Origin: Macrostomum lignano
Lineage: Eukaryota
Assembly: GCA_002269645.1 (NCBI GenBank)
Contig: NIVC01000114.1
Span: forward strand, 682,001 to 746,000
DNA: 64,000 bases
Reading direction: 5' to 3'
The notes under the pieces were generated by a model. The model searched no databases. It saw nothing but the letters and a program-made list of their open reading frames with translations, and was not told the origin of the DNA. Shown one piece after another: positions 3,601 to 36,800 of the stretch. A program made the translations under genes and the position numbers. Every line of letters begins with the position of its first letter. Within the stretch, counting starts at the first letter, position 1.

Positions 3601-6600
3601 CATTTATAATTAGTCAGTTTATGTATTACTGACTTTTACTATGTGAATCTTACCGGTGGCTTTTCCGTAAACAGCGTGTCTCGAAGTCTTGTTTGGATTA
3701 ACGTCAAACAAAGCACATTGATATTTGTTTATTTATTTGCTAGTCCTAAGCGTAGTTTTTCAAAAATATTCGTCCCTATGCTTGAATTGTCCAAGAGCAA
3801 AACTGCATTGACTATCAGTTGAGCCATTTACTAACTTTCAGATTGACAACAATGGCCGTCTGTCCGCCCAGTTACTGCACAGCAACGGCTCCGACATCGC
3901 AGCGCTGACGTCCTCAGTCTCGGTGGCCACCGGCAGCTTCGTCTCCGTGAAGATCTCCGTGTCGATATCGGGTCGCTCGCTGTCGCTGTCAGTGTCATCT
4001 TCAGTCAGGTCGGCATCGCTGAGCAGTGCGAGTCCGCTGCCGCAGCTCTCAGGCCAGCTCATCATCGGCGGCTTCAGCGGCGCCAAGCCAGCCCCGGCTC
4101 CGCCGTTGAGCGGCAGCATCAGCAGATCAAAGAGATCGCTGCCATCCAGTGTCGCCGCAGCTGTTGGCAATGACACCACAGCATTTCGCGGCGTGCTGAG
4201 CTCAGTGAGACTCAACGGTGACACGCCGCTACTGCTGGGCCCTGTGCCCACCAGCTTGATTGACAGCCTGCCAACAGCCGTTAGCGCCGAAAACTCCACA
4301 GAAGTGACCACTGGGGCTCGCACTGAGAGCGTCTGCGTAGCTTCCACACCCTGCCAGAATGGAGGGAACTGTTCGGATGTGTTTTACAACTCCTACTCGT
4401 GAGGATTTGCTGATTGCTTCTTTGTTTTATTGTAGAGAGTCATTTGAGCTCCCATGACCTCCCCACTAAGATTTGGTTTGGTAGTAATTTTCCATTTTTA
4501 TTCGTAGGTGCAATTGCACCGCTGGATGGCGAGGACGCAACTGCTCAGACCGAGACCTGTGCCACCCATCCGCCGGCTCGTGTCCGAACGGCACCCAGTG
4601 CGTCAATTTGGATGGCTCCGGTGGATTTGAGTGTGAGAGAATTTTGCTTGCATTAATCTGTGATTTTTATCATTCCTTTAAATTCTCAAATCTCCAAAAA
4701 TTCCTTTTAAGAACGTCATTTCAAACAACTCGCTAGTGAAGCGGCTCTTGTGACTTTTTAACGTTTAAATTCGATTGAGATGTGACTGTTGCGTCACAAG
4801 CGCTTAACTTTTGCTAGAGATGTGACTCTAATTCATCAAGATAATCTACTCAGTGGTTTTTACAGCAAATCTAGCGCGCGCATCAAATACGACTGAATCT
4901 ACGGCTTAAAAGTCGTTTCAAAGTCGCAGACAATAAGACGCCTCAAATTAACTCTCCTATACGACTTTTTGACCACTTTTGGCGATTTGTACCGTGACAT
5001 CTCGTCGCTTTAGAGCAGGGGTCGACAAACTTTTTATTTCAAGGGCCAGGTAAAGAAGCTAGATCATTGCTGCTGGCCAGACAAGCGCGTCAAAGAGAGG
5101 GAATGGGGGAGAGAGAAGAAGAAAGGGAGGAGAGATGAGATAGGATATGTGATTAGGAGAGGAGATGAGAAGAGACAAACCTTGAGCGAGCTGGATCGCT
5201 ATTGTAAAGTTTCAAAGAACCCGAGGTCCGGATAGAGAGGCTTCGCGGGCCGGAGTTTTCCGATCGCTGCTTTAGAGTCATCTACATGTAGAGTCACTTC
5301 TTTCCTACAAGTATTTTACCTGTGTTACCTGCAGCGACTCTGTGGCGACACACAAGTTACTGTTGTCACGTTTGACACAAGTGACCATCAATTCCCCATT
5401 GCCAGGTCGCGCGGCTGCCACATTCGGCAGCAATCTGCAGTCGCCGCTCAGCACCAGTCAGCTGATTCTGTCCGCATCCAGTCTAAATGAGTCCCTAGCA
5501 ACGGTTACCGGGTGGGCTCGAACCCGTCAGTCGGACTGTCAGCTGTTGTCAGTGTCCAGCGGAGGTCGTCAGCTGACTGTGGGCTGCAGCTCCGGTCAAC
5601 TGCAGGCCGGCCTTGACAACCAGACAGCGTTGGTAGCGGTTGGCATAGCAACGGGTTTACCGTTCACCTTTAGCGTAAATTGTTCTGCGGGCTCACCTCT
5701 CAGCCTGCAGGTATCTGTCAATAGCAGCGACTCGGTCTCGGTGTCCAGCAAGTCTGCCCTAGCAACCGACTTGTTGCTAGACTCCGCTGCCAAGGTTACC
5801 TTGGGCGGCATCAAATTCAAAGGTTGCCTTGACAACGTGCGACTCAACGGGCGCCTGGCACCCCTAGCGAATCGATCCCTGCTTCCTAGCGGAGCTGCCG
5901 GGTTCGAGTGGGCCTCGGAGTTAGTGTCCGCGCCTATGATCGGTTGTCATGGCGACCAGGTGTGCCAGACTACTGTCAACGAGCGGACAGAGAATGTCTG
6001 CCAGAATTCTGGCAGGTGCACCGATCTGTGGAACAAGTTTGCGTGCAGCTGCACTGATGGCTTCTATGGCGACACTTGCTCGGCGAAACTTGGCGCCACT
6101 GCGAGCGTCTCCACGGCTGTCATCATCGCCGTATCCGTTGTGGGCCTCGTCATCATCATCTCTGTTGGTGAGTTAATGTTGATGCAGCTGAAACTGCAGT
6201 GACGGACACTTTCTGGGACAGAAACGTCAGTGAAAGACGCTTCAGTGACAGACACTTCACTGACAGACACTTCATTGATAGACACTTCACTGACAGACAC
6301 TTCACTGACAGACATTTCACTGACAGACACTTCACTGACAGACACTTCACTGACAGACACTTCACTGACAGACACTTCACTGACAGACACTTCACTGACA
6401 GACACTTCACTGACAGACACTTCACTGACAGACACTTCAGTGACAGACACTCCAGTGACAGACACTCCAGTGACAGACACTCCAGTGACAGACACTCCCG
6501 TGACAGACACTTCATTGACAGACACTTCACTGACAGACATTTCACTGACAGACACTTCACTGACAGACACTTCACTGACAGACACTTCACTGACAGACAC

Positions 6601-9600
6601 TTCACTGACTGACACTTCACTGACTGACACTTCACTGACAGACACTTCACTGACAGACACTTCACTGACAGACACTTCACTGACAGACACTTCACTGACA
6701 GACACTTCAATGACAGACACTTCATTGACAGACACTGCACTGACAGACACTTCATTGACAGACACTTCATTGACAGACACTTCACTGACAGACACTGCAC
6801 TGACAGACACTTCACTGAAAGACACTTCACTGACAGACACTTCACTGACAGACACTTCATTGACAGACACTTCATTGACAGACACTGCACTGACAGACAC
6901 TTCATTGACAGACACTTCATTGACAAACACTTCACTGACAGACACTTCACTGACAGACACTTCACTGATAGACACTTCAGTGGTAGACACTTCACTGATA
7001 GACACTTCACTGACAGACACTTCAGTGGTAGACACTTCACTGACAGACACTTCACTGACAGACACTTCATTGACAGACACTTCAGTGGTAGAAATTTCAC
7101 TGACAGACACTTCAGTGGTAGACACTTCACGGACAGACACTTCATTGACAGACACTTCACTGATAGACACTCCCGTGACAGACACGCAAACAACAGCTAT
7201 ACAGAATTGTATTTACAGAATGACACAATTTTCTTTTTACTTTTTTCTTGGCAGAAGAGTTTCTTAATTTACCCACGTGGTAGAGAGTTTAAGTTATAAA
7301 TTATTTAACTTTGAGCCTTGTTAGCCCCTTCAGTATGTGTCAGCCTGCCTATTGTGATCGTGCTTCTTGGCATGCAATGCCAAGAGTTATAAATTAATTT
7401 GATATCTCATTTTATACTGTGCCAACTTTTAATTAGATATGTTCTCAGCAATCTGCAGCAAAGCGGGTTGTAGCCTAGTGGTTAGAGAGTCGGAATCACG
7501 ACTGAAAGATTGGGGGTTCGATTCTTGGACCACTCAAAACAATTTATCAATCTGCAGAAATCAGCTATAAATCTGCAGTAAGCGGTTGTCAATCTACAGT
7601 AATCAGTTATCAATCTGCAATAATCAGTTATCAATCTGCAATAATCAGTTATCAATCTGCAATAATCAGTTATCAATCTGCTGTAATCAGTTATCAATCT
7701 GCAGTAATCAGTTATCAATCTGCTGTAATCAGTTGTCAATCTACAGTAATCAGTTATCAATCTGCTGTAATCAGTTATCAATCTGCAGTAATCAGTTATC
7801 AATCTGCTGTAATCAGTTGTCAATCTACAGTAATCAGTTATCAATCTGCTGTAATCAGTTGTCAATCTACAGTAATCAGTTATCAATCTGCAGTAATCAG
7901 TTATCAATCTGCTGTAATCAGTTATCAATCTGCAGTAATCAGCTATCAATCTGGAGTAATCAGTTATCAATCTGCAGTAATCAGCTATCAATCTGCAGTA
8001 ATCAGTTATCAATCTGCAGTAATCAGTTATCAATCTGCAGTAATCAGTTATCAATCTGGAGTAATCAGTTATCAATCTGCAGTAATCAGCTATCAATCTT
8101 CAGTAATCAGTTATCAATCTGGAGTAATCAGTTATCAATCTGCAGTAATCAGCTATCAATCTTCAGTAATCAGTTATCAATCTGGAGTAATCAGTTATCA
8201 ATCTTCAGTAATCAGTTGTCAATCTTCAGTAATCAGTTATCAATCTACAGTAATCAGTTATCAATCTGGAGTAATCAGTTATCAATCTTCAGTAATCAGT
8301 TGTCAATCTGCAGTAATCAGTTATCAGTCTGCAGTAATCAGTTATCAATCTGCTGTGATTAGTTATCAATCTGCAGTAATCAGTTATCAATCTGCAGTAA
8401 TCAGTTGTCAATCTGCAGTAATCAGTTATCAATCTGCAGTAATCAGTTATCAATCTGCAGTAATCAGTTATCAATCTGCTGTAATCAGTTATCAATCTGC
8501 AGTAATCAGTTATCAATCTGCTGTAATCAGTTATCACTCTGCTGTAATCAGTTATCAATCTGCTGTAATCAGTTATCACTCTGCTGTAATCAGTTATCAA
8601 TCTGCATTAATCAGTTATCAATCTGCAGTAATCAGTTATCAATCTGCAGTAATCAGTTGTCAATCTACAGTAATCAGTTATCAATCTGCAGTAATCAGTT
8701 ATCAATCTGCTGTAATCAGTTATCAATCTGCTGTAATCAGTTATCAATCTGCAGTAATCAGTTGTCAATCTACAGTAATCAGTTATCAATCTGCAATAAT
8801 CAGTTATCAATCTGCTGTAATCAGTTATCAATCTGCTGTAATCAGTTATCAATCTGCAGTAATCAGTTATCAATCTGCAGTAATCAGTTGTCAATCTACA
8901 GTAATCAGTTATCAATCTGCTGTAATCAGTTATCAATCTGCTGTAATCAGTTATCAATCTGCAGTAATCAGTTGTCAATCTACAGTAATCAGTTATCAAT
9001 CTGCAATAATCAGTTATCACTCTGCTGTAATCAGTTATCAATCTGCTGTAATCAGTTATCAATCTGCTGTAATCAGTTATCAATCTGCAGTAATCAGTTA
9101 TCAATCTGCAGTAATCAGTTGTCAATCTACAGTAATCAGTTATCAATCTGCAGTAATCAGTTATCAATCTGCTGTAATCAGTTATCAATCTGCTGTAAAC
9201 AATTATCAATCTGCTGTAATCAGTTATCAATCTGCAGTAATCAGTTATCAATCTGCAGTAATCAGTTATCAATCTGCAGTAATCAGCTATTAATCTGGAG
9301 TAATCAGCTATCAATCTGCTGTAATCAGTTATCAATCTGTATTAATCCACTTCCTGAACCGGTCTTATGCAAAGTTTAAAATTCTAAGCCGGCAAACTCT
9401 ACTAAAAGCAAGCAAAATCGTAAAATGACTTTATTGTTATTATTTAATTTTTATTTCAACCCGAACTTCCAGTTGCAGTGCTGCTTTTCAAGTACGTGCA
9501 GAACCGTCGCAAAGAGTCTGGCACCTACGGTCCGTCCAAGGCTGAGAGTCGGAGCAACGCCCACGCGCAGGCCCAGCCACCTGTGAGGCCACCGCCTGAG

Positions 9601-9615
9601 GAGCGCCTCATTTGA
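631..9615 (+). CDS. crb: Crumbs ortholog, 3' part (EGF repeats - 3 LamG domains with interspersed EGF - TM - FERM-binding/PDZ-binding tail); 5' exons lie upstream of the window
   Basis: Exons with GT-AG borders and continuous frame: 631-959, 2299-3569, 3842-4398, 4508-4632, 5406-6167, 9473-9615. Contains the Crumbs-type EGF with a long insertion ([30 protein letters not shown]), three LamG domains and a TM segment ([23 protein letters not shown]). The tail [18 protein letters not shown]...[12 protein letters not shown] carries the GTY and ERLI motifs diagnostic of Crumbs. Confidence 0.93.
1400..2245. repeat. Unclassified interspersed repeat in a crb intron (second copy ~4710-5340), here interrupted by a foldback MITE
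   Basis: Shares blocks with 4710-5340 (caaacaactc.ctagtga; gtcgtttcaaagt.gcagacaataa.acgcctcaa; tgtaccgtgacat.tcgtcg; tagagtcact). Boundaries are approximate. Confidence 0.55.
1616..2017. mobile_element. Foldback MITE with long TIRs and TA flanks (Tc1/mariner-type target)
   Basis: TA|TAGTATTTGTCATGCTATCTCAGCCTAGAGACATCCAAACTCAGCCAG ... CTGGCTGAGTTTGGATGTCTCTAGGCTGAGATAGCATGACAAATACTA|TA. The arms stay inverted for roughly 150 bp and there is no ORF. Confidence 0.85.
5016..5269. mobile_element. Non-autonomous hAT (Buster-like) element
   Basis: Exact 8-bp TSD CTTTAGAG at 5008-5015 and 5270-5277 (central TA). Imperfect TIRs CAGGGGTCGACAAAC and GTTTTCCGATCGCTG. Confidence 0.8.
6225..7186. repeat. 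15-bp minisatellite (GACAGACACTTCACT)n in the last crb intron
   Basis: Direct tandem periodicity; it produces the spurious (DTSLT)n and (SEVSV)n ORFs. Confidence 0.95.
7463..7541 (+). mobile_element. tRNA-like SINE head (family 2)
   Basis: A box TAGCCTAGTGG and B box GGTTCGATTC; homologous to the 5' end of the SINE at 60627. Confidence 0.7.
7545..9345. repeat. 21-bp minisatellite (AATCAGTTATCAATCTGCAGT)n in the last crb intron
   Basis: About 1.8 kb of tandem 21-mers with point variants and no unique spacers. Confidence 0.95.
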
Positions 9616-11650: not shown

Positions 11651-11689
11651 TAGTATCAATAGATACCAAAGAGCGCCAGCATCAGGGGA

Positions 11690-12290
11690 TTTAGCACCAG
11701 GGGCTTTAGCACCAGGGGCTTTAGCACCAGGGGCTTTAGCACCAGGGGCTTTAGCACCAGGGGCTTTAGCACCAGGGGCTTTAGCACCAGGGGCTTTAGC
11801 ACCAGGGGCTTTAGCACCAGGGGCTTTAGCACCAGGGGCTTTAGCACCAGGGGCTTTAGCACCAGGGGCTTTAGCACCAGGGGCTTTAGCACCAGGGGCT
11901 TTAGCACCAGGGGCTTTAGCACCAGGGGCTTTAGCACCAGGGGCTTTAGCACCAGGGGCTTTAGCACCAGGGGCTTAGCACCAGGGGCTTTAGCACCAGG
12001 GGCTTTAGCACCAGGGGCTTTAGCACCAGGGGCTTTAGCACCAGGGGCTTTAGCACCAGGGGCTTTAGCACCAGGGGCTTTAGCACCAGGGGCTTTAGCA
12101 CCAGGGGCGCCAGAACCAGGGGCTTTAGCAGCAAGGGCTTTAGCACCAGGGGCTTTAGCACCAGGAGCTTTACCACCAAGGGCTTTAGCACCAGGGGCTT
12201 TAGCACCAGGGGCTTTAGCACCAGGGGCTTTAACACCAGGGGCTTTAGCACCAGGGGCGCCAGCACCAGGGGCGCCAGCACCAAGGGCGA
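11690..12290. repeat. 15-bp satellite (GGGGCTTTAGCACCA)n with a GGGGCGCCAGCACCA variant
   Basis: Tandem array; the same family occurs at 28428-28490, 29515-30228 and 56546-56655. Confidence 0.95.
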
Positions 12291-15196: not shown

Positions 15197-18100
15197 TCAG
15201 AAAAACACCTCCTGTGGACAAGGCGGCATTCCGTCCGGTCTCAGGTGTCCAACTCGAACACCGGTTGGGCCGTTCAAGTCGAATCTGTCCCAAACCCACG
15301 GGCTTCGATGCTTCTCGTCGTGAGCTCGTCGGAGCTTCAGGAAAACAAGAATACCTGCAGGTGAAAATGATTTGAACAGAATAACGAAGCCTCGCTCGTT
15401 AGTTATGTAAAACAACGGACTCACCAATGCAGGCGCCAATGATAATGATCGTGGATGAAACAATTCCTGCGATCAATGCACTCGCACTTCTAGGCGAGTC
15501 TTTATTTGAATCCTTGTCAGAACACGTAGGACCTTGCCACCCATCTGCACACTCACATCTGTAACACATTGGAGTCAGATGCGGTGATAGAATACAATTT
15601 GGGTTACTACTCGTATTTAGCTACCTTAACTAAACTTACCTATAGGTGACAAAGAAAATATTCAAACACGTAGCGCCATTCTGACAAGATTTTGAAGTCT
15701 CACAAGGAGTTTCAGCTTCAGTGATAAAAGCGACTCCTTCTGACTTGCTGGCAACAATGGCTGCTGGAAGCCTGTCGGTCCAACTAAAATCGTTTTGCAC
15801 GAGGATCAACGCCCAATCCGAATTAATTTTAAGGGCACCAATAACACCTCGAAACGCAGAAATATTGGATGAAAGAAGCCGAGCAACGGCAGTTGGCAGT
15901 GACGCCAGCGATCGTCTTGATCGCCTGCTGGGATTAAACGATGGAGCCGGAGCTGGCTTGGCGCCGCTGAAGCCGCCGATGATGAGCTGGCCTGACAGCT
16001 GCGGCAGCGGACTCGCACTGCTTAGCGATGCAGAACTGACTGAAGATGACACTGACAGTGACAGCGAGCGACCCGATATCGACACGGAGATATTTACGGA
16101 GACGAAGCTGCCGGTGGCCACCGTGTCTGGGGATGTCAAGGCTGAAATGTGGGAGCCGTTGCTGTGTAATAATTGGGCGGACAGACGGCCTTCGTGATCG
16201 ATCTGAAAATATTGAAACGAACATTGACTTTTAGAGATGAAAAAATGAATATAATACAATCCACAAAAGAGCACCATAATGGACACTGACCGTAGCGAGA
16301 AGTCTCGGAGTGGTCGCCGAGTCGCTCGGGTCGCCCAGCAGCAGCAGAAACGCTCCTCGAGACAAAGTCACCAGCCTCAGCTCAATCGTCCACGAGTCTC
16401 CGCCAGACAAACTTGACGCATTTGGCAGAGAAGCGAAACTCGCAGACGATACAAGTCCGCTTATGCCGAACGAGTACTGTGGAAGCAGCACGGAGCAGTT
16501 TTTGCCTCCGAAGTGAGCGAGGCAGCCGGTGCAGGCATAATCCGCTACCAGGTCCTTGCAGACGGCTCCGTTCTGACACGGCTGTCCGAACCGCTCGCAC
16601 TCGTTGATATCGACTGAGCAGGTCGGGCCCTCGTAGCCGGGCAGGCAGTCGCAGGTGAAACTTCTGACACCGTCGGTGCACCTGCCGCCGTGCTGGCACG
16701 GGCTCGACGCGCAATCCTCGATCTTGGAGCTGCAGGTGTCGCCTTGGAAGTCGACGCGAGAGCAATCGCAGGTGAACCTGAAATGATGACGTTGATTTTA
16801 TTTCGCTAGATTTGGCTTTTGTTATCTGAATTGTACACAATTGGCAAACATGTTTTCATTGTGCTTGCGGTTTTTAATTAGTGACATTATTTTACTAAAA
16901 ATGCCTGTTTTCAAGCCTCACATACATATAAATGTGTGATTTAAACTGATGTAAAAACTTCTGTTCTGACCAGCAATGACCTAAATCAATACGTTTCCCC
17001 AATGCGTTCTTTCTTATATTATCAGACTCAACGATTGCAATAATGTGAGAAGCGTTTAGCAGTAACTTTCCGTTAATAGTATACACCATTTTACCTCCTA
17101 TTTTGAAAAAAAGTCTTGTTCAAAAGAAACTAGCAGTACTTCAATTCAAACACTAAGAAATATCAGTCCTCGCGGAAATTCAATTCAAACAAGGTCCCTT
17201 TTTATTGAAACAGAAGACATTTAATTCAGACTGTCTGTGGCCAAAATTGTCCACAAAGTGACGCCCATGCGCAGATTTAAAATTCAAAAGAAACAAAGTT
17301 ACATTCTATTCCAGCAAAGAGATAAAACACAGCATATTATCGAAAATAAGAGTAAAATAAAAAACAGGAACATGACAAGAAGGACAAGACAAGATAGAAA
17401 AATTGGAGCAATGGAAGAGGTCAAAGATAAAATTGACAACACGACACGAACCATCGCCACTCATCCAACATCCAATCGTATAGAGCATTAAGCAGCGGCT
17501 CTGCTCTCTGTTTGGTGGGTCACTGGGTCCGACAGAAGTTCAGGTGAGTGCTCGGGAATGTGTGAATGTCTGCTTACCCACAATATTATATAATATACAA
17601 ATTTATATAAGTAACGCAGAAGCAGATCATGCGATGAAGACATCAGGTTTTTATCCTCACTTTTAGCGATTGGCAGCTTGAAAGCGAGGTATTATTGCCA
17701 TGTTGTATAGCAGCTCGCGTTTTCGTGTCGGCTTTGTGACAACTTAACAAATGCACAAAAATGCTTTAAAGCACGATGGAAACACTCGGAAATCTAACTT
17801 CCAGGTCCTTAAAATACGTATTAATAACTATATACATGTATGATAGAAGCGAACCTAGTACCTGTATGCCACTAAGAACCCAACCCCGAAGACGCTGTCT
17901 AGAGCACGCACACTCAAGAACCGAACCACAAGGCAACTTCAGCACCTAGAAGCATCTAACCCCAATCAATCGACCCTAAGCTCAAACCCAAAGCACCCAA
18001 AAAGAACTCAACCGCAAGCACCCAACCACAACCCATCCTCAAGCACCCAACCACTATGCAACCCCAAGCATCTAACTCAACAAGGACGCAATCGTAACCC

Positions 18101-21100
18101 AACAACAAGAACCCAACTCAAAGTACCTAACTACAAAGCAACCAGAAGCTAGACTCAAACCTAACAACCCGACACCAAGAACGAAGTCTCAAGCACCCAT
18201 CAACAACTCAACCCCAGCACCCAACAACGATCCAAATCTAAGCACTTACCCCAACACAAGCACTCAGGTACAACCCATCTCCAATCAAGCAACCCAACGC
18301 ATCTACCCCTGACACCCAGCCAGAGCTAACCCAACCCAAAACACTCAGCAAAACCTATTCCCAGGCACCCAACCTCAAATACGCAACAGCAAGTACCCAG
18401 TCACAACCCATCAAGTACCTAATCCCAAAAATTAAGTCAGCCCAAGAAACCGAAAACAAAACTCTCTGGATTTCATGCAAATAAAACTGAAGCGCTATCC
18501 AGAACTGCAAGATTATCCCAAGGAATTAAAAACTCAACCAGCTTTGAGCCACTCACGTGGAGTTTCCATCCCTGCAGACGCCGCCGTTCTGACAGGGCCC
18601 TGACAGGCAGTAGTCAGTGTCCACTGAGCAGTTCCTGCCCTCCCAGCCTGTGAAGCAGCTGCAGCTGTAGTTTTTTACCAGGTCCGTGCACAGGCCCTTA
18701 ATGCACGGCTTGCTGGCGCAGTCGTCAATGTTGTTTTGGCACCTGTCACCTGCGAATCCCGTGTCTGTGCAGTCGCAGGTGAAGCTCCTGACACCGTCGG
18801 TGCACCTGCCGCCGTGCTGGCACGGGCTCGACGCGCAGTCATCGATCTTGGAGCTGCAGGTGGCGCCTTGGAAGTCGACGCGAGAGCAGTCGCAGCTGAA
18901 CCTGACAAGACAAAGTTGATTTCATTTCGCTATGTTTGTCTTTCGATGAGTGTTAGTGAATGGTTTAAGAAACGTCTTTTCAAGTGTCACATTCTGTAAA
19001 AATACGAGTATTTGGCTTCTTTGATTTAAATTGATACAAACTTTTTCTAAGTCCTGGGAGTCCGTGATGCTTTTAGTGACATCTGAGGAAGTTGTTTTAT
19101 TAAAAATTTTTAATTGGACTCCCCTGGGAAGGTGTGACCAGCATTGGGTAAATCAATACGATTTTCCCGTACGAGTGTGTTCTCAAATTATCAGGAAAGA
19201 CGGTCAGAATTATCTGTGAAACATATTTAAGTAAATTTTGGGTTAATGTTCTCTAAGTACTAAGAAAACTTCCAACAGTTTCTGGGGAGTTTTTGCTTGA
19301 CTATGCCTTCTGCCGTAGCAGATAATCATTTATTTAGGATTAATACTCGATTTTGCATTGTCCGTTCAAGATTCCTACAAGTAAATGATGGAAAAAACAC
19401 AAAACATGGCAGAAAACTAAAAAACGCACAGAAAGAGTTCCAAAAACCACGGCACAAAGACTCGAGAATTACCCAACCCTAAGCCTCCAACCACAATCCA
19501 ACCCCAATCCTCCAACCACAACCCAACCCAAAGCACCCAACCACAACCCAACACAAAGCACCCAACCACAACCCAAAGCACCCAACCACAACCCAACACA
19601 AAGCACCTAACCACAATCCAACACAAAGCACCCAACCACAATCCAACCCCAAGCCTCCAACCACAATCCAACCCAAAGCACCCAACCACAATCCAACCCA
19701 AAGCACCCAACCACAATCCAACCCAAAGCACCCAACCACAACCCAACACAAAGCACCCAACCACAACCCAACCCAAAGAACCCAAACACAACCCAACACA
19801 AAGCACCCAACCACAATCCAACACAAAGCACCCAACCACAATCCAACCCAAAGCCTCCAACCACAATCCAACCCAAAGCACCCAACCACAATCCAACCCC
19901 AAGCCTCCAACCACAACCCAACACAAAGCACCTAATCACAACTCAACACAAAGCCTCCAACCACAATCCAACCCCAAGCCTCCAACCACAATCCAACCCC
20001 AAGCCTCCAACCACAATCCAACCCAAAGCACCCAACCACAATCCAAACCCCAAGCACCCAACCACAACCCAACCCAAAGCACCCAACCACAACCCAACCC
20101 AAAGAACCCAAACACAACCCAACACAAAGCACCCAACCACAATCCAACACAAAGCACCCAACCACAATCCAACCCCAAGCCTCCAACCACAATCCAACCC
20201 AAAGCACCCAACCACAATCCAACCCAAAGCACCCAACCACAACCCAACACAAAGCACCCAACCACAACCCAACACAAAGCACCTAACCACAACCCAACCC
20301 AAAGAACCCAAACACAATCCAACCCCAAGCTTCCAACCACAATCCAACCCAAAGCACCCAACCACAATCCAAACCCCAAGCACCCAACCACAACCCAACA
20401 CAAAGCACCCAACCACAACCCAACACAAAGCACCCAACCACAACCCAACACAAAGCACCCAACCACAACCCAACACAAAGCACCCAACCACAACCCAACC
20501 CAAAGAACCCAAACACAATTCAACCCCAAGCCTCCAACCACAATCCAACCCAAAGCACCCAACCACAATCCAACCCAAAGCACCCAACCACAACCCCTCC
20601 TCAAGCACCCAAATCAACCCCAGCCACCCAACCTATGAAAGAATGGCTTTTAAGACAGCATTGGTTGTGGAAAGTGAGAAATAGACACGCATGTTTAAAA
20701 AGGCACTATAGCATCGATGCATTGTTATCTTGGTAGCCGTGCACGAGTGCAAATGTGATGATCGGTCAACTAAGATAGACATCTAATTGGCATCTAAAAC
20801 TGAGATGATTGTACGGTTACTTTGAACGTATCTGAGAAAGTTACATTGAGTTGCAGGAAATTAAATTTGTAAATAGCGATACATTAAAGTTACAATCCGA
20901 CACAACCCTAACAAACCCGAAGGACTCAACTACAAGCACCCATGCAGATAGAACTGCAGCACAATTCAAAATTGCAAGATTATACCAAAAAAGTAAAAAC
21001 ACAATCGGTTTTGAGTCACTCACGTGGAATTTCCGTCGCTGCAGACGCCGCCGTTCTGACAGGGCCCTGACAGGCAGTAGTCAGTGTCCACTGAGCAGCT

Positions 21101-24100
21101 CCTGCCCTCCCAGCCTGTGAAGCAGCTGCAGCTGTAGTCTTTCACCAGGTCCGTGCACAGGCCGTTGGCGCAGGGCTTGCTGGCGCAGTCATCAATGTTG
21201 TTTTGGCACCTGTCACCTGCGAATCCTGTGTCTGTGCAGTCGCAGGTGAATCTGAAATTCAAGCAGAAAACTCGGCACTCTAGTCCGGCTGCTCAGTGTG
21301 TTTCCATTGGCAGTTTTCGGTGTTCATTTTTTAACTATACAAACGACGGTTAAAAATTTCGGAGTAAGGTTTTATAGGTTCAGAGTCGTAGTTACACTGT
21401 ATATTAGTTTCAGTAGTCACTACAGAAGAAAAAAATAGAATCGAATTAGGAGAGTACCTTTCTCGAATCTTTACTAACGAAAATTGAAGAACTCAACCGC
21501 AGGGACATCAAGGTTGTAACCATGGCCCTCTCATGTCATAAATGTTTTTTTGCCAGACATCGCTAACCCCAGGTAAAAACCGGCAGTGAGGAAAGCCCAT
21601 TATGCCTCTCCGGTGTTGAGAATGCGGAGCATTTCATCTGTGAATCCCCGTCTTTTACAAAGGACAGTCTCACCTGCCTCGGCCCCAACCCGGATTTTTT
21701 CGATGCTTTCAGGCTTGAGAATTTCTGCCAGATCGCTCGCTAACTTATTGGCTACCATCCTGAAGGCACCCCAGCACCAGCTGCCTGTGGTCGCCAGGAG
21801 GTAGTATGGGAGTTGACGCCTAGAGCCCCCTGCAGCTGAGTCAAGTCAACAAGGAGAACTCACGTGCCGTTGCCATCAATGCACCTGCCGCCATTGAGGC
21901 AGACGCCCGTTGGACAGTCGTTGTGGTTGATGTTGCAGTTCCTTCCCTCCCAGCCTGTGAAGCAGCTGCAGCTGTAGTCATTCACCAAGTCTGAGCACAG
22001 GCCGTTGGCGCAGGGCTTGCTGGCACAGTCATCAATGTTGATCTCGCAGTTGGTGCCTGCATGCAGATTGAAAAATCGAAAGGAAGGAAAAAATCAGAAA
22101 CTTCAGTTTAGCGGTTGCTGTGCATATGTAGTCCTGGCTGGCTGTTGTGGTGACTCCAACAGGTCAGATAACAGCTAATACTTTCAAAGGTGAGAATTGA
22201 CTTTTTACTCATAGTTTTTTCCAAAATTTACTTTTAAACCGATCGCTTAGATTACGGAGTGGGGAAATGAGAACAAATAATCAGAGCTGGAGGAATTCTG
22301 AGAGTTGATGGATGAGGCATCTGAGATAATGAAAGGGTCCTGTGAGATGGTGGATGGGATCTGCGAGATGATGGATATGGGTGCCTGCATGCAGATTTCA
22401 AAGTCGAAAGGGAAAAAATATAGTCAGGACCTTCCGCTTAGGCGTATCAGTCCTGACTGGCTTTTGTCGTGAATCCTCTTAACTCTTCAATGCTTCACTA
22501 ATACACAACAGAATTCGAAATTTTAACCTGGAAGCGAAGGTACTTTTCTGAGCGCGAATTTCGGAAGAGTGTCCCTAACAGTGGGCACAGCTCACATCAA
22601 ATGTGAAATCTATAAGAAATGGATGCTTAGTGTAGAAATACCTAAATTCTTATAAGCATATTGGTAGGTTGAAAGATAGTCTATAATTTATTTCAGTATC
22701 ATAGACTGTTGGGAAATGTGATGAATTGTTGAGATCGTTTTGACACAGGAGTTCAAGGCATAGCCCCCCTCAGGCCTTACTTAGCTTTGCACAAAGACAC
22801 TGCACAGAAGACTTAGGCTTAAGCAAAAAGACTCCTTTTTGCTGTAAAGACTATCGGACCGCTTGTTCAGATTGTGGTTCTCTGAGAATTGTAACATGGA
22901 CTACAAATGTACGAGTACTACAATCAACTGTCATTCTAACTACGTGCAAAAGAATTTCACAAGGAATTCTGAAATGGACATCAGAAGTTCATTTTTCGAA
23001 TTGCTCTACACGATCCACTGCTTCTTCTAGAATGGCTGCAGCCTATTCGAAGAGAAAACTACAGTCCAATAAAAGAATCAAGATTGTGCTAGCTCCTTGC
23101 ACTTCAAGAACGATGCCTTCATCGACGCGTTCCAGGACACAAATTCTCGTCAAAAAGTGCGCTAACAGTATTTTATCAGCTTCTTGAACGACTCAATGTC
23201 AGCAACAACAGATCAGAGGCACCAGATCAAGTAAGACCGAATGGAAAATGCAAATGTGGAGTTCCTCATTCAGGATGAGATTGCCTCGCTTGCTGACATC
23301 AAAGTGCAGCTTTGAGTGCAACCTGATTGCCGCCGACTTTGTTGTTTTGCCAAAGCCAGCTAAAATAGAATTTCTCATTGTTTACTTAGAGAGTGGAAAT
23401 GTCCCTGAGTTACTCTGCTCTCTGCACATTCGTGACGACTTCACCGTTTCTACAAGCGTCAAAGAACTCCCGGTGCAGTGGAAGAGATTGGCTCGATTTT
23501 TGGACGACGGTCAGGTTCGGCTATTTTCGCAAATTTAAAATCTGCTTGTGTAGTGAGCCGCTAGTTTATGGTTAGGCGTCGCCCTTGTCAGCCGTTCCCT
23601 TGCCCTCCCTTTGGGTTGCTGTCTGCCGCTGGTCAGCTTCCCGCCCTCCTTTCGCTTGCCTGTTGCCCCCGTGTCCTTTCCGCCCTGCTGCGTTTCCGTT
23701 CTCAGCCCTCAGTCTCTCGACTGTGGGCTGTCTCTGTTTCGCTTCCGTCCTGTTTTCCTCTGTCATGTGAGCAAGTCACATGACAGTTCTTGCGTTCTTT
23801 GAGTCTTAAAGTGCAGTAAACATGTTTACTGCACTCGCTGCCCCTGTTTACCGGGTGAGTCACGTGCTTTCGGACCCCTCCCTTCTCTAAGGAGAGGAGT
23901 GACTCATGTTGCTAAAAATAGCAACTGAGTCACAGCCGCGTGTACTCTGGCCGGGGACCTCAAGTGACGTCAGTTCTAAAATAGAACAAGTCACGAGGTC
24001 TTCCGCACGCTTGTACCCTGCCCAGGACTCTCGAGTGACGTCAGTTCTAAAAATAGAACAAGTCACGAGGTCTTGTGCGCGGGTGTTTCCCGGCTATAAA

Positions 24101-26920
24101 TAGGAGCTCTCTCCCCCTTGTTTCCGTCAAGGAGTTCTTGATTCCCGAGTTCTAAGACCCGTGTGCGTTAGCGTCTGAACTGAGCGCCCGACTGCGTTTA
24201 TCGAATCCGTTCTTATTGGTCTGTCTGAGACCCGACCAAGCCAGCCTACGAGAGACTAACTCAGCCCTCCCTGTACCAACCAAGCCCGGCAGGTGCTGCT
24301 GACGAGACGCCTAGTACGTTGAACTGCAAATCTGCACGCTGTGCTGTGTTCGTTGACTTCGTTAATTTCGTTCCGACGGGAAGCTCACCTCACCGAAGGC
24401 CGAGACCTGAAGGAACTGGTGGCAGCACTACCTACGCTACTAAAGTTAAGAAGGCTTCTAAGTGAGAGGACGGAGCCCAAGTCACTGCGCTGTACAGCAG
24501 GACAACCACAGGTACAACACTTGCTTAAATTACAGCTTGGACGACTTCGAATATAACTGACCAAAATGATGACAATAAATAAATTGAAGACGCAATCGAT
24601 TGCCTTACAAAATGGACAGATGCATGCGAGTACACCTCTGAGCTGCTTCATTAATGGATTCAATTTATTAGCTCGCATCTACCCAAAGAGTATTCAGAAG
24701 ACCTCGACAAAACTTTCACTAGCCGTATTTCACTGCTAGCGCATTGCCGCAATAACCATGCATCAGGAAACCACTTTCTTTTTGACGGTCACGCAGCTCT
24801 GGCAGATGTTAAAATGTAAAAAACACAACGACAATCGGCAAGCACAAGAGAAATTGCGGCAGGGATCCCGTTAGGAAGCTAGAAAAGCTTCGACACCAAC
24901 TGAAAGCTTTGGCGTCTCGCTAGAGGTGTCTCACTACCTGCTTACTAACCTGATGTTTCAGTATGTCCTCCTTGGAGCGCTGCAATCTAATTCACTAGAA
25001 TGACAATCTCGATGGTATTGGCACCGCAAAGGATCGAGCTACTATGTGTCCCACAAGAACATTCTGGATACTGAGAAAGCTATTCGATCAGTATCATTAC
25101 TGCAGTTCAGTGGTGTCCAGCCACTGGCAAAGCAAAAGAGATTGTACGTCAGCTGAGCCTGAGTGAATCAATTAGAGATGCAGACGCTAATTTTTTCGAA
25201 TACGTGGCAGGTATATGTTTGTTAGAGCTAGCCATCACTACTCAAAGGAGTTTCACGCCATCCAATGAGCTGCTACTATCTGTTCTAGCCGACATAAAAA
25301 TCGACGGTTCTTCCACTTTTTTATGACTGAATTGACTGAACTTTGATAGCTTGCTTTTTCCGCTTCAAAGGCAGCCTGGGGATCATCTCTCAGTTTCAAA
25401 CCTGCCAGCAGTTTCCAAATTCTCGGCATCGACATAATGCTCTATTTGAAGCAATCAGTTCAGTGGCATTGGAGAGACTTTCAAATCTACGCTACCAAAC
25501 ACACTGCGACATTCAGCACCGAATTCTGCATCGACAGACGCAGCGTCAGGTAAAAAAGTAGCCAGATTCAATTAATGAGCACTAAGGCAATCGTGAGTTA
25601 TCCAATAATTTAAAGAATATTTCAATGCCCTTTATATTGTTTCTGCATATACTCGTAGTTCCCAATTAAGCTTTTAGTGAATTCTGATACGCTTTAATTT
25701 AAAATGCACTTAAGACAGACCTTTGCCTCTAATTTCTGCGAAATCCGATTCAGCGTAAGTTTTAATGCGAAAATCAATTGAAATAAACAAGTTTTTAATC
25801 GATTCCGACATCTAGAAAAAGTTGATTCGATATTTCTGTCTTGACAAGTTTATGTAGGCCAAAAAAGCCTTTAATTCCAGGTTAATATAGAATTCTATGC
25901 TACACTTCACCCGACTGTAAAATGGGTGCATGCATTAGCTGGAGTACGAGCTAATTGAGGGTGCGTGGTGACCCCCCCCCAGTCCTTGAACTGAACAGCC
26001 GTAAGCAGCCTTCGGACGCGCCGCGCAATAGCTGCGGCTGAGCTGTCGGTTCACTATTAATATTCCTTATACTATCATTATTCGTCGAAAGATACTAAAT
26101 AAACTAATACCCTAAATATCGGAAAGGAATGAATTAAAACATTAATCAGTTCTGGCGGGATGGGTTCTGTGAGATGTGGATGGGTTTTGTGAGATGATGG
26201 ATGAGAGATGGTGAGACTATGGAATGATTACTTTTCTCAAATCAATTTGAAGCCTTGGTAAAGGTTACTGTGAGTTTTTGAATAACCATATTTTTAAGTT
26301 TGAAAAAATATTGTTAAATTTTATCCATTGAAGAAAGCCTTTACTATCCAAATGAATTGAGCTATTAAGTCGTATAATGCGATTCTGATAAAAAAGTTCA
26401 AAAAACATTCTTTTGTTTCAAATTTTGATTTACAGCAGGTCACTCACCTGTGTAGCCGGGAGCGCAGCTGCAGTGATACCAGGGGCTTGCGTCTGTGTTG
26501 CTGCAGGTGGCTCCGTTCAGGCAGGGATTTTTTGAATTTTTAGTGCCATCTGAAGTTGTAGCACAAAAATTGATTCTACTTTTACAATGTTCACCAGTGT
26601 ACCCTGCAGTACACAGACACGGAGGAGTGCTTGCCGTCACAGCACCCGGCCAGCAAATGCCGCCATTCTCGCAGTCACCCTCGCTGCAGGCGGCTCGCCT
26701 CGCCCGCGCCAATTCGCCCGCGTCCTCATCCGAACCTTCATATTGCAAATCAGTGGGAAATTTATATTTAGAAGCTGCAATTCTCCTAACAGCCACTTCA
26801 GCTACCTTATAACCCCAACTCACCTGCGGTTAAATCTTCTGAAACGGATACACACGAAACTCGATGCGTAGCCAGCGTCAGAAAAAGAATTAATATCGGC
26901 AGTCGAATGTTGGACGACAT
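15197..26920 (-). CDS. Crumbs-like paralog E: signal peptide, ~13 EGF, 1 LamG, TM, QEVFF tail
   Basis: Exons in transcription order: 26920-26824 (MSSNIRLPILILFLTLATHRVSC signal), ~26774 or ~26735 to 26448 (acceptor ambiguous), 22056-21864, 21251-21024, 18901-18557, 16777-16291, 16202-15640, 15558-15425 ([21 protein letters not shown]), 15354-15197 ([51 protein letters not shown]). The frame is continuous. Confidence 0.85.
17870..18460. repeat. Degenerate AC-rich (CAACCACAA/AAGCACC) intronic repeat
   Basis: Loose copies of the unit seen at 19470-20635; related short copies at ~20880-20940 and ~37690-37800 lie in paralogous introns. Confidence 0.6.
19470..20635. repeat. ~25-bp AC-rich minisatellite (CAACCACAATCCAACCCAAAGCACC)n
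   Basis: Tandem periodicity; source of the spurious LGWVVVG/CGWVL ORFs. Confidence 0.9.
21565..21852 (+). mobile_element. 3' end of an I/LOA-group LINE (CCHC knuckle region and 3' UTR) in an intron of gene E
   Basis: Encodes a degenerate [13 protein letters not shown](S/C)P...RLT.LGP motif and ends in TGAGTCAAGTCAA. Homologous to 38473-38812 and 27590-28250. Confidence 0.65.
23549..24609 (+). mobile_element. Solo-LTR-like element (~1.06 kb)
   Basis: TGTAGT...TTACA termini, TATA-like CTATAAATAG at 24094-24103, AATAAA at 24574 and internal tandem enhancer-like repeats. No clear TSD was found. Confidence 0.55.
23856..24103 (+). promoter_or_regulatory. Cluster of AP-1, CRE, MEF2 and E-box consensus sites ending in a TATA/MEF2 element
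   Basis: TGA(G/C)TCA at 23856, 23900, 23926; TGACGTCA at 23965, 24036; CTA(A/T)4TAG at 23912, 24047, 24094; CACGTG at 23861. Confidence 0.5.
25895..26060 (+). mobile_element. SINE family 2, 3' half
   Basis: cttcacccgactgtaaaatgggtgc...aattgagggtg...ccagtcct.ga.ctgaacagccgta...gctgagctgtcggt matches 60750-60885. Confidence 0.7.
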
Positions 26921-33804: not shown

Positions 33805-36800
33805 TCAGAAAAACACTTCTTGCGGAACGGGCGCCACACCGTCATATCTCAGGTGTCCAACACGAACTCCTGTGGGCCCGTCCAGATCTAAGGTGGCCCA
33901 GTATGATTTACTTATCAGCTTCTCGGCTGCCAGTTTCTTGTGCCTCACGACAATAAAAATACCTGTTCATTACAAGAAATACAGGTGGCATGACGAAAAA
34001 TTAAAAAAGCGAAAGCGAACTTCGACTTACCAACAAACGCAGCGATGGCAGCAACTGCTGCGGCGCAACTACCAGCGATTAATGCCAGAGAAGCATTATT
34101 GCCTATCTCCTGCTTTGTTTGCTTTGCAGAATCTGCTTTGTTGCATTTGGCACCGTGCCAGCCAGCTGAGCACTGGCATCTGCAAACATGGTGCGTGCGA
34201 TTATACAGTTACTAAAATATACACTGGAAGATGGATAAATTACCTACTACATGCATAAAAAAACTTACTTGTAACTGTTAAAAAATGTATTCGTGCATGT
34301 TGCCCCATTCATGCATGGAGAGTCATACTCGCATACGCTCTCGTGGACAATGCCAGTGACAACACCAACAGATTCGGTGGCAATGATAGCATGAGGCCAA
34401 TCATCCAGAGAAAGGTTTCTACTTGAATCTAGAACCAACGGCCAAAGAGAGTTAACTCGAGGAGCTGAAATTAATCCACGGAATGCAGTGATATTTGCAA
34501 GGCTTGACAGTAGCAGACCAACAGATCTCCTTGATCTGCCCCGGCGGCTCGACAATGGATCTGGAGCTGCCCGAAGACCGCTGAAGCCGCCGATGATGAG
34601 CTGGCCTGACAGCTGCGGTAGCGGACTCGCACTGCTTAGCGATGCCGACCTGACTGAAGATGACACTGACAGCGACAGCGAGCGACCCGATATCGACACG
34701 GAGATCTTCACGGAGACGAAGCTGCCGGTGGCCACCGAGTCTGAGGACGTCAGCGCTGCTATAAGGGAGCCGTTGCCGTGCAGTAACTGAGCGGACAGAC
34801 GGCCGGAGTGATCGATCTGAAAAATTCAAGTAAAACCAAACATAAAAATATCTTGAAACCTACAAAGGAGTACCATTACGCTCTTAAGAACACTGACCGT
34901 AGCCAGCAGTCTCAGAGTGGTCGCCGAGTCGCTCGGGTCGCCCAGCAGCAGCAGAAACGCTCCTCGAGACAAAGTCATCAGCCTCAGCTCAATCGTCCAC
35001 GAGTCTCCGCCGTACACACTTGACACACCTGCTGCAGACGCGAAGATCGCTGATGACACGTTGCCGCCCACACCCAGTGAGAACGATGGAAGCTCAACGG
35101 AGCAGTTTCGACCTCCGAAGTCCTCAGCGCAGTGGCACACAAAGTCATTCCACACATCTGAGCACATCGAGCTCGTCTTTGCTTCACAAGGCGATGGGCT
35201 GCCGCACTGCACCGACCGACTGCAGACTCCCCAGGTCGCGTTGCTCGACTCCGCCGTAGTCTCCGAGGCGACCAATGTCGAGTCATTCGTCACGAGCCGC
35301 AGGTCTCTCACGCAGCCGCGGAACCCGCCGCCGTCGATGCCGGATCCGCTCTCGCCGCCGACACGAACCGACATTCGACTGTTCGGCTTGAATGAGTCCG
35401 ACAGTCCGTCGACCAGCTGTGCTCCAGGCAGCTGACTCACTCCTGACTCACTGCGACTCAATTTCGCACTGCCATTGGTCAGCGAGACCGACAGCGTCAG
35501 CCAATCAGTAGAGGCCAAGCTGTCACTGATTGGCCAAGCGGCTCGACCAATCACAGACGATGAGGCATTGAAGAACAACAGCACGAGACTGGAGTCGTGA
35601 GCGCCGACTCGGATGTCTCCCCAGTGAGACGAGAGCCGGACCAGATCGAAGTGGGCGAGACTCGTGCGGAACGACAGCTCGAAGGTGCAGTCAGTTGTTG
35701 TGTTAAAATTGGCGCTGAAACTGGACGTCCCGTTGAATGACGCCAGAGTGGTCTCGTTGCACTGCGGTCCAGACCAGCCAGGCTTGCAGGTGCAGCGATA
35801 GCCGTGAGCAGGTGACGGCAGCTCGCGAAGAAGCAGCGGCTCGCAAGTAGCATTGTTCTGGCACGGGCTGGAGTCGCAGCCAGTCAGTCTGACGCTGCAG
35901 TTTTTGCCTCCGAAGTCAGCGGGGCAGCCGGTGCAGGCATAATCCGCTACCAGGTCCTTACAGACGGCTCCGTTCTGACACGGCTGTCCGAAGCGCTCGC
36001 ACTCGTTGATGTCGACTGAGCAGGTCGGGCCCTCGTAGCCGGGCAGGCAGTGGCAGGTGAATGAGGCCAGGCCATCCGTGCAGTTTGACGCGTGAGCGCA
36101 CACGCTGCGGTTGGTGGCCGGGTCCAGACAGTCGTTAGGGTTGATGGAGCAGGTGTCTCCGTAGGTACCTGTTGCAGTTAAATGAAAATTAATTTAGGTT
36201 GGAATTAATTTAGGATGTACCGGATCTCCTCACCATTTTGGCAGAGACAGACGAAACCGGCAGCCAGCGCGTAGCGGAAGCTGCCGTTGAACGGTGCCGG
36301 CAGCGGTGAGTTTCCATACAGAGCCTGGTTGCTGCGCTCCAGACAGGCGCCACCGAACTTGCACGGATTCGGCGAGCAGTCCGGCACGTCATCGGAGCAG
36401 GTCTTTCCCGAGTAGCCGCTGAAGCAGCTGCAGCTGAAGTCTCTGAGCCCGTCAGTGCAGGTGGCGTTGTGGCTGCACGGGTTGCTGGCGCAGTCGTCAA
36501 TGCGGCTCTGGCAGTTCGGTCCGTAGAAGTCGGTGGCAGAGCAGTTGCAGGTGAACCTGAATCGAAAAATTGAGGTAAGGTAGCACGCTTTAAAATGCAC
36601 AAAAATGGAAATAACAGCATAGATTATTTTTTAACTTCTTCCAACTTTCTTCCTATTTCTTATATAGGTAAAACCAAAAGACACTTGTACACTAGTTTAA
36701 AAGAACGTTGGTTAAAAAATTCGGCTATCCAGGACCACCAGCTCTGCTGCAACAGCTGTTGTAATAGTGAGCAAACTCGGCAGTTCAGAATTATTGATTT

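What the first reader, a model, noticed from the sequence alone, without database searches (positions are those of the whole stretch)
15197..15354. New conserved cytoplasmic motif [14 protein letters not shown]..P.PQEVFF* replaces the Crumbs GTY/ERLI tail
Seen: three 158-nt phase-1 terminal exons (15354-15197, 33962-33805, 48569-48412) encode ...[27 protein letters not shown], ...[27 protein letters not shown] and ...[28 protein letters not shown] has a very different juxtamembrane half and many synonymous changes but keeps this block, which argues for purifying selection. The ends align PPCPQEVFF with crb RPPPEERLI (Pro-rich, E at -3), so the tail may be a remodelled ERLI. Established: a hydrophobic residue at -2 and 0 (V-F-F) is a class II PDZ-ligand pattern like neurexin EYYV or syndecan EFYA, and the GTY FERM motif is absent. 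Inference: these paralogs switched PDZ partner, and GVRVGHL is an unrecognised docking motif.
Basis: partly seen in the sequence, partly recalled or inferred. Interest (0 to 1): 0.85.

Follow-up and report, generated by a model that had tools for sequence, protein, structure and literature searches.

The report
New tail on flatworm Crumbs paralogs
In the flatworm Macrostomum lignano, duplicated copies of the cell-polarity gene crumbs next to the normal gene carry a different, selectively conserved intracellular tail ending in -EVFF; the tail is real and partly transcript-supported, but so far seen in one species and with no tested function.

Summary
Three 158-nt phase-1 terminal exons on the minus strand encode ...DL[N/D][20 protein letters not shown]. 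The window is Macrostomum lignano contig NIVC01000114.1. One copy (g1) is the last exon of GenBank PAA90322.1 (830 aa, hypothetical protein), a model built from RNA-seq, so exon and frame are transcript-supported for that type. Copies D and g3 have no protein model.

The canonical crumbs gene lies beside them on the plus strand and ends ...[11 protein letters not shown]...PPPEERLI*. The copies are therefore Crumbs-derived paralogs that lack both Crumbs tail motifs.

Between D and g1, the last 27 codons have dN 0.13 and dS 1.30. The juxtamembrane 24 codons have dN 0.72 and dS 1.04. That indicates purifying selection on the protein, not gene conversion.

A profile search of 1.84 billion representative proteins found the tail only in M. 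lignano. Pfam and PDB gave nothing. The proposed alignment to ERLI is not significant (p 0.13-0.44); only the intron position matches. The -EVFF end fits the class II PDZ-ligand pattern and resembles Caspr4 -KEYFF, but binding, partner switching and a GVRVGHL docking role are untested.

Verdict: a real, lineage-restricted variant of a known family, of modest interest.

The parts
15197..15354 (-). Terminal coding exon of paralog g1 (PAA90322.1 / Mlig031842.g2). It encodes the last 6 TM residues plus a 46-aa cytoplasmic tail ending PQEVFF, with the stop codon at 15197-15199.
   Evidence: P0003 residues 779-830 map here at 100%
15425..15558 (-). Penultimate exon of g1: end of an EGF repeat, a linker and most of the TM helix. 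The donor G|gtgagt is phase 1.
   Evidence: TM helix modelled by AF2
15197..26920 (-). Whole g1 gene: signal peptide exon 26920-26822, EGF exons, one LamG domain, TM and the new tail. The product is 830 aa.
33805..33962 (-). Terminal exon of paralog D. The juxtamembrane half has diverged; the 27-aa C-terminal block is conserved ([27 protein letters not shown]).
   Evidence: identical protein in homeolog L002 with 2 synonymous changes
34031..34179 (-). Penultimate EGF/linker/TM exon of D. The donor G|gtaagt is phase 1.
48412..48569 (-). Terminal exon of paralog g3, a recent duplicate of g1 (5 differences in 158 nt; the tail block is identical in protein).
48641..48789 (-). Penultimate EGF/linker/TM exon of g3.
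61790..61867 (-). Decayed relic of the same tail block, downstream of paralog E's LamG-EGF-TM exon: LDPTAGVWVGHLGS*LAKPVPQEVFFNM. It has an in-frame stop, has lost one codon and has lost the terminal stop.
   Evidence: tblastn E = 3e-4 within the window
9473..9615 (+). Terminal exon of the canonical crumbs gene (gene A): (V)[46 protein letters not shown]. This is the reference tail that the paralogs lack.
   Evidence: UniRef A0A1I8G0Z2 uses this exon
5276..6167 (+). ORF span holding the LamG3-EGF-TM exon of canonical crumbs; 5276 is the ORF start, and the acceptor, which lies downstream of it, was not located. It ends with a phase-1 donor (G|gtgagt) at the same position in the TM helix as in the paralogs.

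Best explanation
The 158-nt segment is the true last coding exon of Crumbs-derived paralogs of Macrostomum lignano. These paralogs sit in a tandem array next to the canonical crumbs gene.

Shown:
- The exon completes the transmembrane helix and encodes a 46-residue cytoplasmic tail.
- For the g1 type, the exon and its frame are used in RNA-seq-derived gene models (PAA90322.1, PAA70383.1).
- The tail has neither the FERM-binding GTY motif nor the ERLI end. Both are present in the neighbouring true crumbs gene.
- The last 27 residues ([31 protein letters not shown]) are under purifying selection at the protein level. The juxtamembrane half evolves almost freely.
- The tail is modelled at low confidence without secondary structure, and it has no relative outside this species in the databases searched.

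Inferred:
- The tail works as a short linear docking module.
- The invariant free C-terminus -Q-E-V-F-F acts as a class II type PDZ ligand (hydrophobic at -2 and 0, E at -3, like Caspr4 -KEYFF).
- The upstream [11 protein letters not shown] segment extends or specifies that interaction.
- The paralogs would thereby keep a Crumbs-like EGF/LamG ectodomain but connect it to a different cytoplasmic scaffold from Pals1/Par6/Moesin.
For: - Exon, phase and frame.
- Identity with PAA90322.1 / A0A267GYE0 (830 aa, signal peptide to EVFF) and mapping onto the window.
- The GenBank models derive from StringTie/TACO/de novo RNA-seq assemblies plus TransDecoder: (PMC5730564).
- Canonical crumbs with GTY...ERLI lies 5.6 kb away on the other strand.
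- Paralogy: 72.9-77.6% nt identity to crumbs in the LamG2 exon, and 95-96.5% in a converted 1.27-kb tract.
- EGF and Laminin_G_2 domains.
- Selection: block dN 0.13 and dS 1.30, versus juxtamembrane dN 0.72 and dS 1.04. Fisher p = 1.8e-5 and 3.5e-5. The sense frame has the lowest pN/pS.
- Homeologous contigs L002 and L003 differ by synonymous changes only.
- PQEVFF is invariant despite three synonymous changes.
- The TM helix is confidently modelled. The tail has block-mean pLDDT of about 46-52 and no secondary structure.
- An -EYFF PDZ ligand precedent (Caspr4 ENQKEYFF) and class II ligands EFYA and EYYV: (PMC5623046).
Against: - No binding data of any kind exist.
- A Phi-x-Phi C-terminus is a loose pattern that many proteins match by chance.
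- There is only one deep independent comparison (D versus g1/g3).
- D and g3 have no annotated protein in the collections searched, and I could not find their start or signal-peptide exons. D may therefore not be expressed as a full protein.
- RNA-seq reads among near-identical paralogs and homeologs are multi-mapping, so support for a particular locus is uncertain.
- The motif was found in no other species. Long-term conservation is not shown.
- Paralog E has let the block decay, so it is dispensable in at least one copy.
- AF2 with a 3-sequence alignment says little about a tail.
Confidence: 0.5

Rival explanations
1. The conserved block is functional but is not a PDZ ligand. It would be a sorting, endocytosis or retention signal, or a docking site for a non-PDZ partner, with the terminal FF acting as a hydrophobic anchor rather than a carboxylate-dependent ligand.
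For: Purifying selection covers 27 residues, far more than the 4-6 a PDZ pocket reads. The most invariant stretch, [11 protein letters not shown], lies 12-22 residues from the C-terminus. A conserved W-x-x-[FL]-D-L lies just upstream in both lineages (alignment). No PDZ evidence exists.
Against: The very last six residues, PQEVFF, are invariant with three synonymous changes, and the stop codon position is fixed. This is typical of C-terminus-dependent ligands. The end resembles Caspr4 -KEYFF.
Confidence: 0.3
2. The tail is a diverged ERLI that still engages the normal Crumbs partners (Pals1/Stardust, Par6). The paralogs would then be redundant or dosage copies with no partner switch.
For: The exon architecture matches crumbs: a phase-1 intron with six exon-encoded hydrophobic residues before the first basic residue. 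There is a Pro-rich run before the end, E at -3, and hydrophobic residues at -1 and 0 in both.
Against: Sequence similarity between the tails is not significant (p 0.13-0.86). Position -2 changes from Arg to Val. The FERM-binding GTY is gone. The canonical tail is kept unchanged in all three homeologous contigs right next to the paralogs, so two distinct tail types are being maintained.
Confidence: 0.1
3. The block has no function of its own. The similarity would reflect recent duplication or gene conversion, an RNA- or DNA-level constraint, or an antisense gene.
For: g1 and g3 are recent duplicates. Gene conversion is active in this array (95-96.5% tracts). The antisense frame that shares wobble positions also shows low pN/pS (0.26) and is open.
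Against: D versus g1 is near saturation at synonymous sites inside the block (pS 0.62). Conversion or a nucleotide-level constraint would erase that. The low antisense value is the expected mirror effect of shared third positions. Transcript-derived models read the sense frame.
Confidence: 0.05
4. The paralogs are transcribed but are decaying or non-functional duplicates typical of the neopolyploid, repeat-rich M. lignano genome. The tail would be a short-lived species-specific novelty.
For: The motif is seen only in M. lignano among 1.84 billion representatives. Paralog E carries a broken copy. D and g3 lack annotated models and recognisable 5' exons. The array is full of minisatellites and holds a DIRS-like retroelement.
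Against: D and g1 are about as diverged from each other as from crumbs (about 75% nt in the LamG2 exon, 62-64% in the TM exon), yet both keep the block and an open frame. g1 is a complete ORF with a signal peptide.
Confidence: 0.05

Closest known systems
Canonical Crumbs (Drosophila Crb, vertebrate CRB1-3; here M. lignano gene A, UniRef A0A1I8G0Z2)
   Same: Type I membrane protein with an EGF + Laminin-G ectodomain, a single TM helix and a short tail (46 aa here versus about 41 aa in gene A). A phase-1 intron sits at the same place in the TM helix. The paralogs are physically adjacent to the true crumbs gene and 72.9-96.5% identical to it in nucleotides over shared exons.
   Different: The tail lacks the juxtamembrane GTY FERM-binding motif and the ERLI PDZ-binding end. 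The tails show no significant sequence similarity. The ectodomain is shorter: g1 has one LamG, D and g3 have two, and none has the LamG3 of crumbs.
CRB3-CLPI (CRB3 isoform b), PMC2064851
   Same: A Crumbs-family member whose ERLI end is replaced by an unrelated C-terminus, with a different localisation and interactions via importin beta (abstract). It is a precedent for tail replacement changing partners.
   Different: It arises by alternative splicing of one gene, not by gene duplication. The sequences are unrelated, and CLPI is not the EVFF motif.
Class II PDZ ligands: Caspr4 ENQKEYFF, syndecan-1 TKQEEFYA, neurexin-1 NKDKEYYV (PMC5623046; CASK-syndecan PMC2133028)
   Same: A free C-terminus with E at -3 and hydrophobic or aromatic residues at -2, -1 and 0. 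The -E-Phi-F-F end matches Caspr4 most closely.
   Different: V rather than Y/F at -2. No binding has been measured. The conserved region here extends about 20 residues further upstream than in those ligands.
FG-GAP/VCBS-like repeats of a repeat protein of unknown source (P0004)
   Same: A 14-residue resemblance, LLDGPTG[IV]KVAKGQ versus [14 protein letters not shown]. It scored E = 1.9e-10 only because it recurs eight times.
   Different: Those are repeated units, read from their sequence as FG-GAP/VCBS-like (not scanned against Pfam). Here there is a single copy in a tail modelled at low confidence. I treat it as convergence or chance, not homology.

Membership tests
Crumbs family | Ectodomain of EGF-like repeats interspersed with Laminin G domains | tested here: met
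   Pfam EGF (E = 1.9e-18), hEGF and Laminin_G_2 (E = 2e-6) on the D model. EGF hits are on record for PAA90322.1.
Crumbs family | Single-pass type I topology with a short cytoplasmic tail | tested here: met
   Signal peptide in P0003. One hydrophobic segment is modelled as a helix with block-mean pLDDT 69-85. The tail is 46 aa.
Crumbs family | Descent from or paralogy with a bona fide crumbs gene | tested here: met
   The paralogs are adjacent to the gene with the GTY...ERLI tail. Nucleotide identity to it is 72.9-77.6% in the LamG2 exon and 95-96.5% in a 1.27-kb tract. The phase-1 intron position in the TM helix is the same.
Crumbs family | Juxtamembrane FERM-binding motif (GTY) | tested here: not met
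   No GTY in any of the three tails. It is present in gene A as [11 protein letters not shown].
Crumbs family | C-terminal ERLI PDZ-binding motif | tested here: not met
   The tails end in QEVFF. Alignment to ...PPPEERLI is not significant.
Class II PDZ ligand | Hydrophobic residue at positions 0 and -2 of a free C-terminus | tested here: met
   F at 0 and V at -2, with the stop codon directly after, in all copies.
Class II PDZ ligand | Evolutionary constraint on the last 4-6 residues | tested here: met
   PQEVFF is invariant between D and g1 with synonymous changes in the P, Q and E codons.
Class II PDZ ligand | Carboxylate-dependent binding to a PDZ domain | not testable with these tools
   No multimer prediction or binding assay is available.

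The most novel reading that the evidence does not exclude
The 27-residue block is a previously undescribed two-part docking module: a [11 protein letters not shown] element plus an -EVFF carboxy-terminus. It arose in the macrostomid lineage on a duplicated Crumbs scaffold and recruits a scaffold protein other than Pals1, Par6 or FERM proteins. This would create a second, parallel Crumbs-like membrane system in a flatworm. Meanwhile the extracellular exons keep exchanging sequence with the real crumbs gene by gene conversion.
Probability: 0.25. Interest if true: 0.5.

Novelty: new variant of a known kind. Interest (0 to 1): 0.33.

Why it matters
Crumbs function is largely defined by two short tail motifs. 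A natural set of paralogs keeps the ectodomain, even homogenising it with crumbs by gene conversion, but maintains a different tail under selection. That is a ready-made tail-swap experiment in an animal where transgenesis works. If the EVFF tail has its own partner, it would show how a polarity receptor is rewired after duplication. It would also add a new linear motif to the catalogue. If it has no partner, it is one more lineage-specific duplicate in a highly duplicated genome.

Tried and rejected
1. Word-indexed protein search with the EGF-TM-tail alignment found nothing. This was a false negative of the index: the exhaustive search later found PAA90322.1 and PAA62532.1 with identical tails. 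I draw no conclusion.

2. Frameshift origin. The DNA coding VRVGHL resembles the crumbs KESGTY-coding DNA read in another frame (12 of 15 nt). The local alignment score is no better than shuffles (p = 0.86), and the positions in the exon differ by about 57 nt. Rejected.

3. "Remodelled ERLI" by sequence. Protein local alignment gives p 0.13-0.44. Not demonstrable; only positional homology remains.

4. FG-GAP-like hit P0004 and the repeat proteins P0005-P0007. These are repeat-inflated scores and not homologues.

5. Pfam on the tail and PDB profile search: nothing.

6. AF2 on EGF-TM-tail with 3 sequences. Only the TM helix is confident. No hairpin is predicted for the block. This is uninformative beyond suggesting a disordered tail.

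7. Exact look-up of the crumbs model P0001 on contigs: not on record.

8. Search for an annotated D-type protein: none. Only g1-type P0002 (54% identity) and an unrelated-ending fragment, P0009, were found.

9. Search for D and g3 start or signal-peptide exons by homology to g1: not found.

10. Literature and supplement searches for Mlig031842, Mlig001267 and the accessions: no mention, so no expression or phenotype data.

Full report
**Observation**

Each is 158 nt, follows a cag|GT acceptor and ends in TGA.

The exon upstream of each carries the end of an EGF repeat, a linker and most of a transmembrane helix. These exons are 15558-15425, 34179-34031 and 48789-48641. Each stops at G|gtgagt or G|gtaagt, which is also phase 1, and the introns are 68-71 nt. 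The terminal exon therefore supplies the last six hydrophobic residues of the helix and a 46-residue cytoplasmic tail.

**Organism and gene**

A search with the C-terminus of the plus-strand gene returned a 100% identical UniRef protein of Macrostomum lignano.

The exhaustive profile search with the tail alone returned two real hits, both from M. lignano and both matching at their extreme C-terminus:
- P0003 is PAA90322.1 / A0A267GYE0, "hypothetical protein BOX15_Mlig031842g2", 830 aa.
- P0002 is PAA62532.1. It clusters with PAA70383.1 (Mlig001267g1, 713 aa).

P0003 maps exon by exon onto window 26920-15197. It lies on contig NIVC01000114.1 of GCA_002269645.1.

The GenBank annotation of that assembly was built from genome-guided and de novo RNA-seq assemblies with TransDecoder ORFs. 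Transcripts overlapping repeats were removed (PMC5730564). The terminal exon and its frame are therefore transcript-supported for the g1 type.

Copies D and g3 have no protein model in the collections I could search, and I could not find their start exons. The repeat filter in that annotation may explain the missing models but does not prove expression.

**Context**

The plus-strand neighbour, gene A, is the canonical crumbs. Its LamG3-EGF-TM exon ends at 6167 with a phase-1 donor. After a 3.3-kb intron filled with two minisatellites, its terminal exon 9473-9615 reads (V)[46 protein letters not shown]. That tail carries both the GTY FERM-binding motif and ERLI.

The minus-strand genes are paralogs of it.
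- Pfam finds EGF and Laminin_G_2 domains.
- In the LamG2 exon, pairwise nucleotide identities among crumbs (A), g1, D, g3 and F fall between 73% and 78%. The exception is the recent g1/g3 pair at 88%.
- A 1.27-kb exon tract of D and g3 is 95-96.5% identical to crumbs, which indicates recent gene conversion.
- The tails do not take part in that exchange.

Two other contigs, L002 and L003, carry the same layout. L002 has a D-type tail, a g1-type tail and the crumbs ERLI tail; L003, which starts at its contig's end, has the last two. I take them to be homeologs or alleles of this neopolyploid genome.

**Selection**

| Comparison (D versus g1) | dN | dS |
|---|---|---|
| Whole terminal exon | 0.36 | 1.17 |
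| First 24 codons (TM end and juxtamembrane) | 0.72 | 1.04 |
| Last 27 codons | 0.13 | 1.30 |

The core [11 protein letters not shown] has five synonymous and no non-synonymous differences. PQEVFF has three synonymous and none non-synonymous.

Fisher tests give p = 1.8e-5 for synonymous versus non-synonymous change in the block. They give p = 3.5e-5 for non-synonymous change in the block versus the juxtamembrane half. Synonymous rates do not differ between the two halves (p = 0.75).

Because synonymous sites are near saturation inside the block, gene conversion or a nucleotide-level constraint cannot explain the conservation. The sense frame has the lowest pN/pS. The one antisense frame with a similar value shares wobble positions and is the expected mirror.

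The homeologous copies add four differences, all synonymous.

A caveat is that g1 and g3 are recent duplicates, so there is one deep comparison only.

A fourth, broken copy lies downstream of paralog E's LamG-EGF-TM exon, at 61867-61790: LDPTAGVWVGHLGS*LAKPVPQEVFFNM. It shows that the block predates the split of E, D and g1. It also shows that the block decays when not maintained.

**Relation to the Crumbs tail**

The suggested alignment of PPCPQEVFF with RPPPEERLI is no better than chance. Protein local alignment gives p 0.13-0.44, and DNA gives p 0.59-0.86.

I also tested whether the VRVGHL-coding DNA is a frameshifted GTY-coding segment, and rejected the idea.

What does link the exons is position. 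In crumbs and in the paralogs, a phase-1 intron splits the helix so that the terminal exon supplies six hydrophobic residues, counting the split codon, before the first basic residue of the tail. Descent of the new exon from the crumbs terminal exon is therefore plausible but not demonstrable from sequence.

**Distribution**

The profile of the tail was scored against 1.84 billion representative proteins. Only the two M. lignano clusters are genuine. The other four hits are repeat proteins with inflated scores, one with FG-GAP-like units LLDGPTGIKVAKGQ.

Pfam and PDB give nothing for the tail. The motif is thus undescribed, and on present data it is restricted to this species. The collections probably hold few other macrostomids, so absence elsewhere is weak evidence.

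No paper or supplement I could search mentions these genes.

**Likely mechanism**

AF2 models the TM helix with confidence. It leaves the tail at block-mean pLDDT of about 46-52 with no secondary structure (shallow alignment). This fits a disordered tail carrying linear motifs.

The invariant free end -Q-E-V-F-F satisfies the class II PDZ-ligand pattern. It is closest to Caspr4 ENQKEYFF, used alongside syndecan-1 EFYA and neurexin-1 EYYV as a PDZ ligand (also PMC2133028, listed).

The Crumbs family has a precedent for tail replacement changing partners: CRB3-CLPI (PMC2064851).

My best reading is a docking module whose C-terminus is a PDZ-type ligand and whose upstream conserved stretch adds specificity. 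This step is inferred, not shown. The main rival is a non-PDZ function, because the constrained region is much longer than a PDZ pocket reads.

**Verdict**

- Selection and the loss of both Crumbs motifs are supported.
- The ERLI homology and conservation in orthologues are not.
- The partner switch is untested.

It is a new variant of a known family in a genome known for massive duplication. It is already deposited as hypothetical proteins but never described. Interest is modest.

Noticed in passing
window 602-9615 (+): This is the canonical M. lignano crumbs gene, with its 5' end cut by the window start. Its last intron (6168-9472) is almost filled by a 15-nt minisatellite (6190-7185) and a 21-nt minisatellite (about 7418-9400). 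This contig's GenBank annotation apparently has no model for it, whereas contigs L002 and L003 have a 490-aa model.
   Followed up: partly
window 2315-3580 (+) vs 36152-34886 (-) and 50743-49484 (-): A 1.27-kb EGF-LamG1 exon tract of crumbs is 96.5% identical to paralog D and 95% identical to paralog g3. Neighbouring exons are only about 75% identical. This indicates recent gene conversion between crumbs and its paralogs that stops short of the tail exons.
   Followed up: partly
window 61744-63641 (-): Paralog E jumps from EGF repeats to a LamG3-EGF-TM exon (63161-62402, 66% nt identity to the crumbs exon). Its next ORF (62369-62088) starts AYKIVNLEES...HDNRLASPMWV, resembling g1's [11 protein letters not shown], and then runs into unrelated sequence. 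The tail block survives only as a broken relic about 220 nt past the end of that ORF (about 400 nt past the SPMWV match). E is either a pseudogene or a copy with a replaced tail.
   Followed up: partly
window 56694-59164 (-): A further paralog, F, has EGF exons and a LamG2 exon (57792-58343). It is followed by an ORF (56924-56694) with a TM segment and a short tail ending ...RRRFRNRCCHENVSENFI*, which is E at -3 and I at 0, loosely ERLI-like. Whether this ORF is spliced to F was not established.
   Followed up: no
window 41926-45718 (-): A DIRS-like retrotransposon lies between D and g3. Its ORFs carry a SAP domain, reverse transcriptase plus RNase H, and a tyrosine-recombinase (phage-integrase-like) domain.
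   Followed up: partly
window 11673-12289, 29514-30225, 19471-20612, 40460-41318: More minisatellites lie in and around the paralogs' introns: 15-nt units reading APGAK/APGAG, a 25-nt unit and a 20-nt unit. The two 15-nt arrays are 80-88% identical to each other.
   Followed up: no
window 11340-11643 (-): An isolated fragment of a LamG2-start exon (84-88% protein identity to g1) lies between crumbs and g1. It is probably a dead partial duplicate.
   Followed up: no
window 15188 / 48403: Similarity between g1 and g3 ends 9 nt after the stop codon. The two recent duplicates therefore have unrelated 3' flanks.
   Followed up: no
tool behaviour, vs 27-29: The word-indexed protein search missed PAA90322.1 even though the query contained its exact C-terminal 99 residues and the protein is in the collection. 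Negative results from that tool for this genome are unreliable.
   Followed up: yes
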